The position numbers and the translations under genes are program-made. A DNA stretch of 64,000 nucleotides from Macrostomum hystrix (lineage: Eukaryota > Animalia > Platyhelminthes). The notes under the pieces are model-generated. The model had not been told where the DNA came from. It did no database searches and saw nothing but the letters and a program-made list of their open reading frames with translations. This document shows, one piece after another, positions 35,068 through 37,189 of the stretch (position 1 is its first letter; every line of letters starts with the position of its first letter). The stretch is taken from assembly GCA_950097015.1 (NCBI GenBank), contig CATNEN010000012.1, positions 682,001-746,000 on the forward strand. The letters are read 5' to 3'.

Positions 35068-37189
35068 TCAGCCCATGGCATATTTTCGAGTCCAGTCCCT
35101 GGCCATGCTGTTGTACTTTTCCCGGTCTGTCTTGTACATTCGCGCGATCTCTGGCACCAGGGGGTCGTCAGGATTCGGGTCGCATAGAAGGCTGCAGATG
35201 CTGAGCAGCACCTGAGTTTGGTCATTAAAGGGTACATTAGGTCATAGATATTTCAGAATATGAAAGTCAGTTGGGTCATGTAAGTCAGTGGGCCATGGAA
35301 GTCAGTTGGGTCCTGGAAGTCAGTTGGGTCATGGAGGTCAGTGGATTATGGAAGTCAGTGGTTTATGGAAGTCAGTGGGTTATGGAGGTCAGTGGGTCAT
35401 GGAAGTCAGTTGGGTCCTGGAAGTCAGTTGGGTCATGGAGGTCAGTGGATTATGGAAGTCAGTTGGGTCCTGGAAGTCAGTTGGGTCATAGAGGTCAGTT
35501 GGTTATGGAAGTCAGTTGGTTATGGAAGTCAGTTGGTTATGGAAGTCAGTTGGTTATGGAAGTCAGTTGGTTATGGAAGTCAGTTGGTTATGGAAGTCAG
35601 TTGGTTATGGAAGTCAGTTGGTTATGGAAGTCAGTTGGTTATGGAAGTCAGTTGGTTATGGAAGTCAGTTGGTTATGGAAGTCAGTTGGTTATGGAAGTC
35701 AGTGGGCCATGGAAGTCAGTAGGTTATGGAAGTCAGTGGGCTATGGAAGTCAGTAGGTTATGGAAGTCAGTTGGTTATGGAAGTCAGTAGGTTATGGAAG
35801 TCAGTGGGCTATGGAAGTCAGTGGGCCATGGAAGTCAGTAGGTTATGGAAGTCAGTGGGCTATGGAAGTCAGTGGGCCATGGAAGTCAGTTGGGTCATAG
35901 AGGTCAGTTGATTATGGAAGTCAGTGGGTTATGGAAGTCAGTGGGTTATGGAAGTCAGTTGGGTCATAGAGGTCAGTTGGTTATGGAAGTCAGTTGGTTA
36001 TGGAAGTCAGTGGGCCATGGAAGTCAGTAGGTTATGGAAGTCAGTGGGCTATGGAAGTCAGTTAAGTCATCGAAGTCAGTTAGGTCATGGAAGTCAGTGG
36101 GTTATGGAAGTCAGTAGGTTACGGAAGTCAGTTGGTTATGGAAGTCAGTGGGCCATGGAAGTCAGTGGGCCATGGAAGTCAGTAGGTTATGGAAGTCAGT
36201 TGGTTATGGAAGTCAGTGGGCCATGGAAGTCAGTGAGTTATGGAAGTCAGTTGGTTATGGAAGTCAGTGGGCCATGGAAGTCAGTGAGTTATGGAAGTCA
36301 GTTGGTGTCTTGATTTCTTATGCAACAAATTGAGTCCTCGCAGTAAGAGCCCGTTCATACGGCCGTGAGCCAATTCAGGCCGAGAGTCAAAATATATTTA
36401 AGTTTAACAGAGCGATAAGGAAGGGGGGTTGGCGGTACGATAACAAGAGTGCGCGACTGAGGGTAGGAGAGGAGGCTAGAACGTGAGCGGCGGACCAATC
36501 AGAGAGGAGGAAAGAAAGAAAGGATAGAGAATGAGAGATCAGCCGCAGAGATAACGAGAGAGAAAGAACTAGATTGAACTGGACGATGTAAACAAGAAAA
36601 GTGCAGAGAACGAAAGAGTGAATAGAGGACAGAAGGCAGAGACGAAAGTCGCGACAGTTGGTTATGGAAGTCAGTTGGTTATGGAAGTCAGTGGGCCATG
36701 GAAGTCAATGGGTCATTAAAAGTATCAGGGTCGCGAGAATTCGGGTCATGAAGAGCACTAGAGTACTGGTAGACAGTGGATCGATGGAATAGGTAGGTCA
36801 TGACCGACTCAGGTACAGACGGCTGAACTAGTTAAGTGCAAGGTGTCGTGACAGGTGCAGGGGGTCATAGCAGGTCAAATGATTACCTTTGAAATAGTTA
36901 ATGCCGGACTCCACTGTCCCCGGAGAATGTCTAAGCAGATGGAGCCATTGCTGTTGATGTTTGGGTGGTAGATTCTAGTAGTGAAGGCTACCTTCGGCGG
37001 CTTGAACGGATAGTCGCTGGGAAAGTGAATTGTGAGGAAGAACACGCCGCCGTGGTAAGGGCTGTCAGGAGGGCCCATGATGGTGGCCTGCCAGTGAAAT
37101 AGATCGTCCCCAACTGGACCAGCTGAGCATTGCGCTGGTGGGTCGCGACCCAAATCCTGCAGCTCCTTGTTGATTCGTTTTAGAGCCAT
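35068..37189 (-). CDS. UBE2D: Ubiquitin-conjugating enzyme E2 D (Ubc4/5), 148 aa, 2 exons
   Basis: Exons 37189-36887 and 35211-35068 (phase 0). [10 protein letters not shown]...[16 protein letters not shown]...TISK|[27 protein letters not shown]...WTRKYAMG. Confidence 0.97.
36306..36656. mobile_element. Solo LTR-like element, 351 bp
   Basis: Begins TGTCTTGA, ends TCGCGACA (TG...CA, imperfect 8-bp inverted termini); 5-bp TSD GTTGG at 36301-36305 and 36657-36661 exactly duplicates part of the host repeat unit. Confidence 0.82.
36319..36362 (-). ncRNA. Spliced-leader (SL) exon-like sequence inside the solo LTR
   Basis: Minus strand CCGTATGAACGGGCTCTTACTGCGAGGACTCAATTTGTTGCATA matches 37/44 positions of the Macrostomum lignano SL as recalled from memory (CCGTAAAGACGGTCTCTTACTGCGAAGACTCAATTTATTGCATG; not checked against a database). 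No GT donor follows, so it is not an intact SL RNA gene. Confidence 0.65.

What the first reader, a model, noticed from the sequence alone, without database searches (positions are those of the whole stretch)
36306..36656. Solo LTR-like element carrying a spliced-leader (SL) mimic at its end
Seen in sequence: a 351-bp TG...CA insert with an exact 5-bp TSD sits in the UBE2D intronic minisatellite. On its minus strand, 36362-36319 reads CCGTATGAACGGGCTCTTACTGCGAGGACTCAATTTGTTGCATA, ending 13 bp before the element end, with TAAATATATT about 30-35 bp upstream. Recalled knowledge, unverified: the Macrostomum lignano SL is CCGTAAAGACGGTCTCTTACTGCGAAGACTCAATTTATTGCATG, a 37/44 match. The CCGT/ACGG stem is kept while its loop changes, and ATTTGTTGCAT also matches the end of the schistosome SL. 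The following AAGAA looks like SL-RNA ATG|GTAAGAA with GGT (terminal AUG and donor) deleted. Inference: an LTR retroelement family may have captured SL RNA so that its transcripts start with a built-in SL. That could give SL-dependent translation or stability without trans-splicing, decoy SL-binding factors, or spread SL copies. I know of no description of such an element.
Basis: partly seen in the sequence, partly recalled or inferred. Interest (0 to 1): 0.88.

Follow-up and report, generated by a model that had tools for sequence, protein, structure and literature searches.

The report
Solo LTR with spliced-leader-derived block

Summary
A 351-bp TG...CA insert (36306-36656) with an exact 5-bp target duplication (GTTGG) interrupts a 17-bp minisatellite in the only CDS intron of a two-exon UBE2D gene. 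On the minus strand, 36363-36319 matches the published 45-nt Macrostomum spliced leader (SL) at 38/45 without gaps. The next best match in the window is 26/45, and about 1e-11 such matches are expected by chance. The element's only TATA-like stretch starts 33 nt upstream of the block.

It is not an SL RNA gene: the terminal ATG reads ATA, no GT donor follows, and there is no room for an Sm site. The best reading is a solo LTR whose R region derives from an SL, probably fixed after an ancestral element RNA was trans-spliced and reverse-transcribed.

Three things were not tested: copy number, paired LTRs and conservation of the block.

The claim that nothing like this has been described is wrong. 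SL exons inside retrotransposons were reported in Schistosoma mansoni (2018) and at 597 LTR/LINE-associated loci in 24 parasitic flatworms (2025). The functional ideas (SL-dependent translation, decoy) have no support. Interest is moderate: a new member of a known kind.

The parts
36306..36656 (-). 351-bp solo-LTR-like insert (TGTC...GACA). The minus strand is the proposed sense strand.
   Evidence: the ends, the size, and a single copy in the window; no ORF over 47 aa; no inverted terminal repeat beyond 4 nt.
36301..36305 (.). Target-site duplication, left copy (GTTGG).
36657..36661 (.). Target-site duplication, right copy (GTTGG). It shifts the minisatellite phase by 5.
36319..36363 (-). SL-derived block, 38/45 identical to the published Macrostomum SL. 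The final ATG reads ATA. Proposed to be the R region, or its start.
36306..36318 (-). 13-nt tail between the block and the element end. It has no GT donor and no Sm-like site. Proposed remainder of U5.
   Evidence: The GTAAG donor of the true SL RNA gene is given.
36389..36401 (.). The element's only TATA-like stretch; it reads as TATA on both strands. On the minus strand TATATTT starts at 36396, 33 nt before the block and 30 nt before A36366 in CTCACGG.
36364..36656 (-). Proposed U3. About 75-80% pyrimidine on the minus strand, with inverted CCAAT (ATTGG) at 36499 and 36374.
35259..36305 (.). 17-bp minisatellite, about 61 units, left of the insert.
36657..36705 (.). The same minisatellite, about 3 units, right of the insert.
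36887..37189 (-). UBE2D exon 1 (Met to Lys, 101 codons). A GT donor lies at 36886-36885.
   Evidence: Pfam UQ_con, profile positions 1-101, E 3.7e-40.
35068..35211 (-). UBE2D exon 2 (47 codons plus stop), preceded by AG.
   Evidence: UQ_con, profile positions 95-139, E 3.5e-10.

Best explanation
The insert is a solo LTR of an LTR retrotransposon of a Macrostomum-like flatworm, oriented on the minus strand as U3 - R - short U5. The start of R is a diverged copy of the host-type spliced-leader exon.

Most likely history (inferred): an ancestral element RNA was SL trans-spliced at an acceptor about 13 nt before the end of the LTR. That RNA still carried the primer-binding site, so it was reverse-transcribed. 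An irregular first-strand transfer then placed the leader at the U3/R border of both new LTRs.

From then on the LTR's own TATA box started transcription at or within about 3 nt of the first leader base. Element RNAs were therefore born with the leader, and the block was copied as ordinary R sequence and drifted (7 of 45 positions).

The copy here integrated into the UBE2D intron minisatellite, making a 5-bp duplication. It was then reduced to a solo LTR by recombination between its two LTRs.

Shown: the insert, the duplication, the homology to the SL and its exact extent, the absence of SL RNA gene features, and the TATA spacing. Inferred: LTR identity, orientation, start site, route of capture. 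I expect no SL-specific function: the block is a fossil of trans-splicing carried along as R.
For: - TG...CA ends, exact 5-bp TSD, 351 bp, no ORF, and minisatellite on both flanks, hence solo.
- The block matches the SL at 38/45 without gaps, against a background maximum of 26/45 and a chance expectation of 1e-11.
- The similarity spans the whole 45-nt leader and stops at its 3' end. The GTAAG donor that follows the SL in the real gene is absent, as expected for a spliced leader exon rather than a gene copy.
- The only TATA-like stretch in 351 bp lies 33 nt upstream of the block, and 30 nt upstream of an A in CTCACGG. A single box landing in a 10-nt slot by chance is about 3-4% (my estimate).
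- Precedent for each step exists. An LTR element mRNA is SL1 trans-spliced in C. elegans (Cer1). SL exons inside retrotransposons, and the same proposed route, are reported in flatworms.
Against: - Only one copy is available. Nothing shows that it is repeated, paired, or next to a primer-binding site or polypurine tract.
- The TATA-like stretch is near-palindromic. A plus-strand promoter reading (CCAAT at 36370, TATA at 36393, start near 36425) is also possible.
- There is no canonical AATAAA or ATTAAA on either strand, so R and U5 cannot be delimited. R plus U5 of about 58-61 nt is short.
- A trans-spliced RNA lacks the 5' R needed for regular strand transfer, so the capture needs a rare irregular event.
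- The species, and hence its own SL, is not established. The seven differences might partly be host-SL differences.
Confidence: 0.6

Rival explanations
1. It is a solo LTR, but the SL piece came from the SL RNA itself or its gene, not from a trans-spliced element RNA. The route would be template switching onto co-packaged SL RNA, or DNA recombination, followed by loss of the donor region. The reader's 'GGT deleted' variant is one form of this.
For: AAG follows the block if a 3-nt gap is allowed, and GTAAG follows the SL in the gene. SL RNA is abundant and could be co-packaged (my own knowledge).
Against: Three letters after a chosen gap is chance level. None of the SL RNA intron, Sm-like site or later hairpins is present. 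The similarity ends exactly at the exon's end. No Rfam SL family matches even at E<=10. The full SL RNA gene sequence is only in a figure, so the 13-nt tail could not be compared.
Confidence: 0.15
2. It is a solo LTR oriented on the plus strand. The antisense SL piece then sits 14 nt inside the 5' end of U3 as a passenger fragment, and transcription starts near 36425.
For: On the plus strand there is a CCAAT at 36370, 23 nt before TATATTT at 36393, and about 230 nt would be left for R-U5.
Against: No known route puts an antisense leader at the start of U3. The exact fit of the leader's 5' end to the minus-strand TATA spacing would then be coincidence.
Confidence: 0.12
3. It is not an LTR at all but another short mobile element (a MITE or other non-autonomous DNA transposon, or a SINE-like retroposon) that happens to contain an SL piece.
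For: The 5-bp TSD and TG/CA ends are not unique to LTRs. The parent element has not been seen.
Against: There are no terminal inverted repeats beyond 4 nt. There is no A-rich or simple-repeat tail at either end, no tRNA, 5S or snRNA-like head, and the SL is at the wrong end for a retrocopy or SINE head.
Confidence: 0.08
4. It is a degenerate SL RNA gene or pseudogene, or the resemblance is chance.
For: 38/45 identity to the SL, with a TATA box upstream.
Against: ATA stands in place of the ATG that all flatworm SLs end with. There is no GT donor and no room for an Sm site, because the element ends 13 nt later and the flank is minisatellite. The block lies inside a TSD-bounded insert. Chance is excluded at about 1e-11.
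Confidence: 0.02

Closest known systems
SL-bearing retrotransposon loci of parasitic flatworms (PMC12582326, 2025; PMC5832876, 2018)
   Same: A leader sequence without the rest of the SL RNA lies inside LTR or LINE elements. [quoted passage not shown]
   Different: Those reports are counts made while filtering SL RNA candidates. They describe 'partial leader sequences', in trematodes and cestodes, with no anatomy given. Here the whole 45-nt leader span is present, in a solo LTR, at TATA-to-start distance, in a probable free-living macrostomid.
Cer1 (Ty3/gypsy-type element of C. elegans), whose mRNA is SL1 trans-spliced (PMC3315495)
   Same: It shows that LTR-element transcripts are substrates for SL trans-splicing.
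   Different: In Cer1 the SL is added to RNA and is not encoded in the element. The full-length 8-kb RNA is not trans-spliced.
Recycled cDNAs with relic SLs in dinoflagellates (Slamovits and Keeling 2008, as cited in PMC12582326)
   Same: Genomic SL copies arise by reverse transcription of trans-spliced RNA.
   Different: Those are retrocopies of host genes with the SL at the 5' end of the copy, not part of a mobile element's terminal repeat.
Solo LTRs of ta-TRIM elements acting as promoters in Echinococcus (PMC4558846)
   Same: Flatworm solo LTRs lie near or inside genes, and they interact with trans-splice acceptor sites.
   Different: Those LTRs carry no SL. They provide a cis donor that competes with the SL.
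Macrostomum lignano SL RNA gene (109 bp; PMC8629364)
   Same: It shares the leader exon (38/45).
   Different: The gene has ATG|GTAAG, an Sm-like site and two more hairpins. None of these is present here.
Site-specific non-LTR retrotransposons of SL RNA genes (SLACS, CZAR, CRE in trypanosomatids; NeSL-1 in nematodes). Named from my own knowledge, not checked here.
   Same: They also associate a retroelement with SL sequence.
   Different: Those elements insert into SL genes, so the SL is flank, not content. This insert carries the SL inside its own TSD-bounded body and sits in a minisatellite.

Membership tests
Solo LTR of an LTR retrotransposon | 5'-TG...CA-3' termini with short inverted ends | tested here: met
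   TGTC...GACA; the inverted ends are only 4 nt long.
Solo LTR of an LTR retrotransposon | 4-6 bp target-site duplication directly flanking the repeat, with no internal region | tested here: met
   GTTGG on both sides. Both flanks are the same minisatellite, out of phase by exactly 5 nt.
Solo LTR of an LTR retrotransposon | Promoter (TATA) and polyadenylation signal inside the LTR, defining U3/R/U5 | tested here: inconclusive
   There is one TATA-like stretch, readable on both strands. No AATAAA or ATTAAA occurs; only one-mismatch variants do.
Solo LTR of an LTR retrotransposon | Multi-copy family; paired direct copies flank PBS - gag/pol - PPT | not tested
There is a single copy in the window. 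The source genome is not among the tools' collections.
SL RNA gene | Leader exon ending in AUG, followed at once by a GU donor | tested here: not met
   The block ends ATA and is followed by AGAAAT. No GT occurs before the element end. The gene has ATG|GTAAG.
SL RNA gene | Sm-binding site and downstream hairpins (about 100-nt RNA) | tested here: not met
   Only 13 nt remain before the TSD and minisatellite. No Rfam match at E<=10.
Processed retrocopy of a trans-spliced mRNA | SL at the 5' end of the insert, mRNA body, then poly(A) tail at the 3' end | tested here: not met
   293 nt of the insert lie upstream of the SL, and there is no A tail.
SL-bearing retrotransposon locus (as in PMC12582326 and PMC5832876) | Leader sequence as the only SL RNA feature, inside or within 500 bp of a retrotransposon | tested here: met
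   The leader is the only SL RNA feature present. It lies inside an insert with LTR hallmarks. The retrotransposon identity itself rests on the rows above.
MITE / DNA transposon | Terminal inverted repeats of about 10 nt or more | tested here: not met
   Only 4 nt (TGTC/GACA); no other terminal pair was found.

The most novel reading that the evidence does not exclude
The family has turned the host's spliced leader into its own R region as an adaptation, not as a fossil. Trans-splicing of a retroelement's genomic RNA would normally remove the 5' R and block first-strand transfer. An element whose R is the leader would keep R homology whether or not its RNA is trans-spliced, and its transcripts would carry an SL-type 5' UTR from birth. 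That would be a retroelement strategy specific to hosts that trans-splice.
Probability: 0.1. Interest if true: 0.7.

Novelty: new member of a known kind. Interest (0 to 1): 0.4.

Why it matters
Genomic SL copies inside mobile elements are a nuisance for SL RNA gene finding and for calling trans-splice sites. They are also a record that retroelement RNAs are trans-spliced in the germ line.

This copy is a clean anatomical example: the whole leader is present, its end coincides with the splice junction, it lies at TATA-to-start distance, and it sits inside a TSD-bounded solo LTR. Published reports give only counts.

If the family proves to be multi-copy with the block kept, it would show that a leader can be fixed as the R region of an LTR. 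It would also give a dated series of SL fossils in a free-living flatworm lineage. Nothing here bears on harm or on host fitness. The host gene's coding exons are untouched.

Tried and rejected
- Rfam at E<=10 on 35800-37200, and at gathering score on the whole window: no SL RNA or any other family; only two chance rows. ARAGORN found no tRNA.
- Self-BLAST of the 351 bp against the window: no second copy.
- Pattern search with the 35-nt published SL at up to 3 mismatches: no match, because the block has 4 mismatches to that form. The ungapped scan replaced it.
- Species identification failed. Six window ORFs are not in the protein collection. The ASC-channel ORF has a single hit, a Macrostomum lignano protein at 47% identity. 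LETM1 has nothing closer than 42-51%. UBE2D is too conserved and the database is clustered at 90%. The window is not human and nothing in it looks human.
- The SL RNA gene sequence of M. lignano is only in a figure, and no supplement is held. The 13-nt tail and the bases upstream of the block therefore could not be compared.
- A search for terminal inverted repeats found none beyond 4 nt.
- The M. lignano LTR-retrotransposon paper (PMC12801592) does not mention spliced leaders.
- The two UBE2D exons were searched apart, by reference. The joined model was not made or searched.

It found nothing and was not used again.
- In my working thoughts I also recalled the schistosome leader and a UBE2D motif from memory.
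- Every comparison reported here rests on sequences printed by papers or on Pfam.

Full report
**What is there.** Between 35259 and about 36705 the window holds a 17-bp minisatellite. At 36306-36656 it is interrupted by 351 bp of unrelated sequence that begins TGTC and ends GACA. GTTGG stands directly before and directly after the insert. The left flank stops 16 nt into a repeat unit. After the second GTTGG the right flank continues with the missing base and the next unit. The extra GTTGG is therefore a genuine 5-bp target-site duplication and not an effect of the periodic flank. The insert has no ORF longer than 47 codons and no terminal inverted repeat beyond 4 nt. It matches no Rfam family and has no second copy in the 64 kb.

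**Host context.** The insert lies in the only CDS intron of a UBE2D-type gene on the minus strand.
- Exon 1 is 37189-36887 (Pfam UQ_con, profile positions 1-101, E 3.7e-40), followed by a GT.
- Exon 2 is 35211-35068 (UQ_con, profile positions 95-139), preceded by an AG.
- The two exons were searched apart.
- The SL-like block is on the same strand as the gene.

Other genes in the window are an ASC-type channel, LETM1 and an EF-Tu-like GTPase. The window is from an animal and not from a human.

The species could not be fixed. The only hit of the channel ORF is a Macrostomum lignano protein at 47% identity. The other searches were uninformative. With the leader match, a macrostomid flatworm is likely. 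Whether it is one of the three species with a published leader is open.

**The leader match.** I took the leader from papers, not from memory. The 35-nt M. lignano form is in PMC8629364. The 45-nt and 43-nt forms of M. cliftonense and M. hystrix are in suppl. Table S3 of PMC10468722. The published forms are identical over the stretch they share.
- The minus strand 36363-36319 matches the 45-nt form at 38 positions without a gap. The next best of about 128,000 positions scores 26, and the chance expectation is about 1e-11.
- Of the seven differences, five are transitions.
- Three sit in the 4-nt loop of the 5' hairpin, and one multi-base event could explain those.
- One turns the terminal ATG into ATA.
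- One change makes the 3' end equal to the end of the schistosome leader as printed in PMC7986045 and PMC5832876. That may be coincidence or may reflect the host's own leader.

**What it is not.**
- It is not an SL RNA gene. The real gene has ATG followed by GTAAG, an Sm-like site and two more hairpins in 109 bp. Here ATA is followed by 13 nt without any GT, and then the duplication and the minisatellite.
- It is not a retrocopy of a trans-spliced mRNA. 293 nt of the insert lie upstream of the leader and there is no A tail.
- It is not a MITE, because there are no inverted ends.
- It is not chance.

**What it most likely is.** TG...CA ends, a 5-bp duplication, a few hundred bases, no coding capacity and an internal promoter-like box are the marks of a solo LTR.

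On the minus strand the first 290 nt are 75-80% pyrimidine. The only A/T-rich stretch of the element is 36407-36389. TATATTT starts 33 nt before the first leader base and 30 nt before the A of CTCACGG at 36366. Read this way the LTR is U3 (36656-36364), then an R that begins with the leader, then a very short U5.

The similarity covers the whole published leader and ends at the splice junction. That is the signature of a spliced leader exon copied from RNA. By definition, the 5' end of a retroelement RNA becomes the U3/R border.

I therefore think an ancestral element RNA was trans-spliced near the end of its 5' LTR and was still reverse-transcribed. An irregular strand transfer then fixed the leader as R. 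After that, the LTR's own promoter made RNAs that start with it.

Each step has precedent. The mRNA of the LTR element Cer1 is SL1 trans-spliced. SL exons merged to transposable elements were found in S. mansoni, where the authors say they might be trans-spliced, retro-transcribed elements. In 24 parasitic flatworms, 597 SL-like loci lie in LTR and LINE elements, with the same proposal.

**Weak points.**
- There is only one copy, so family, pairing, primer-binding site, polypurine tract and conservation of the block are all untested.
- The TATA-like stretch is near-palindromic. On the plus strand a CCAAT at 36370 precedes it by 23 nt, so a plus-strand promoter is possible. I favour the minus strand because of the fit to the leader's 5' end, at roughly 3 to 1.
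- No canonical poly(A) signal exists on either strand.
- The irregular transfer needed for capture is rare.
- The seven differences cannot be apportioned between drift in the element and differences in the host's own leader.

**Function.** Nothing supports SL-dependent translation, stability or a decoy role. The block has lost the AUG. It has no donor, so it cannot be donated. The special cap of true SLs comes from the Sm-bound SL RNP and not from the leader letters (my own knowledge). The parsimonious view is a fossil carried as R.

The most novel reading not excluded is that a leader-derived R makes the element tolerant to trans-splicing of its genomic RNA. I give that about 0.1.

- I did not scan any public collection (by pattern, look-up or accession) with the element or its leader block.

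**Verdict.** The functional reading is unsupported and the novelty claim is overtaken by the literature. This is a new member of a known kind, of moderate interest.

Noticed in passing
window 1-64000: Minisatellites are extraordinarily dense. 24 separate arrays with periods of 16-52 bp (one of 111 bp) cover about 19.9 kb, 31% of the window. Many lie inside introns or between genes, and each has its own unit.
   Followed up: partly
window 31994-32925, 38098-38489, 63055-63467 (minus): A dispersed repeat of about 400 bp occurs in three copies at 88-94% identity. The first copy is split by about 500 bp that holds a 21-bp tandem repeat. Two copies flank the UBE2D gene in the same orientation. It is unrelated to the 351-bp insert.
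   Followed up: partly
window 50187-51223 (+): A mariner/Mos1-type transposase remnant (HTH_48, E 2.5e-13). The reading frame is not continuous, with at least one break. Ends and duplication were not examined.
   Followed up: no
window 59166-59855 and 61574-62755: Several inverted repeat pairs of 56-141 bp at 77-98% identity lie in the A/T-rich right end of the window. They may be small foldback or MITE-like elements.
   Followed up: no
window 36319-36363 (-): Five of the seven differences from the published leader are A/G exchanges on the sense strand (three A to G, two G to A), and none is C/T. There are too few to interpret, but other copies could be checked for RNA-editing-like or deaminase-like bias.
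   Followed up: no
window 35068-37189 (-): The UBE2D gene has only two coding exons. By codon count (101 + 47) it encodes one residue more than the usual 147, an extra C-terminal Gly. The exons were not joined or searched as one.
   Followed up: partly
PMC8629364 (literature): The sequence first published as the M. lignano SL RNA maps to the 5' end of a trans-spliced protein-coding gene. Genome-encoded leader copies outside SL RNA genes are therefore already on record in Macrostomum.
   Followed up: no
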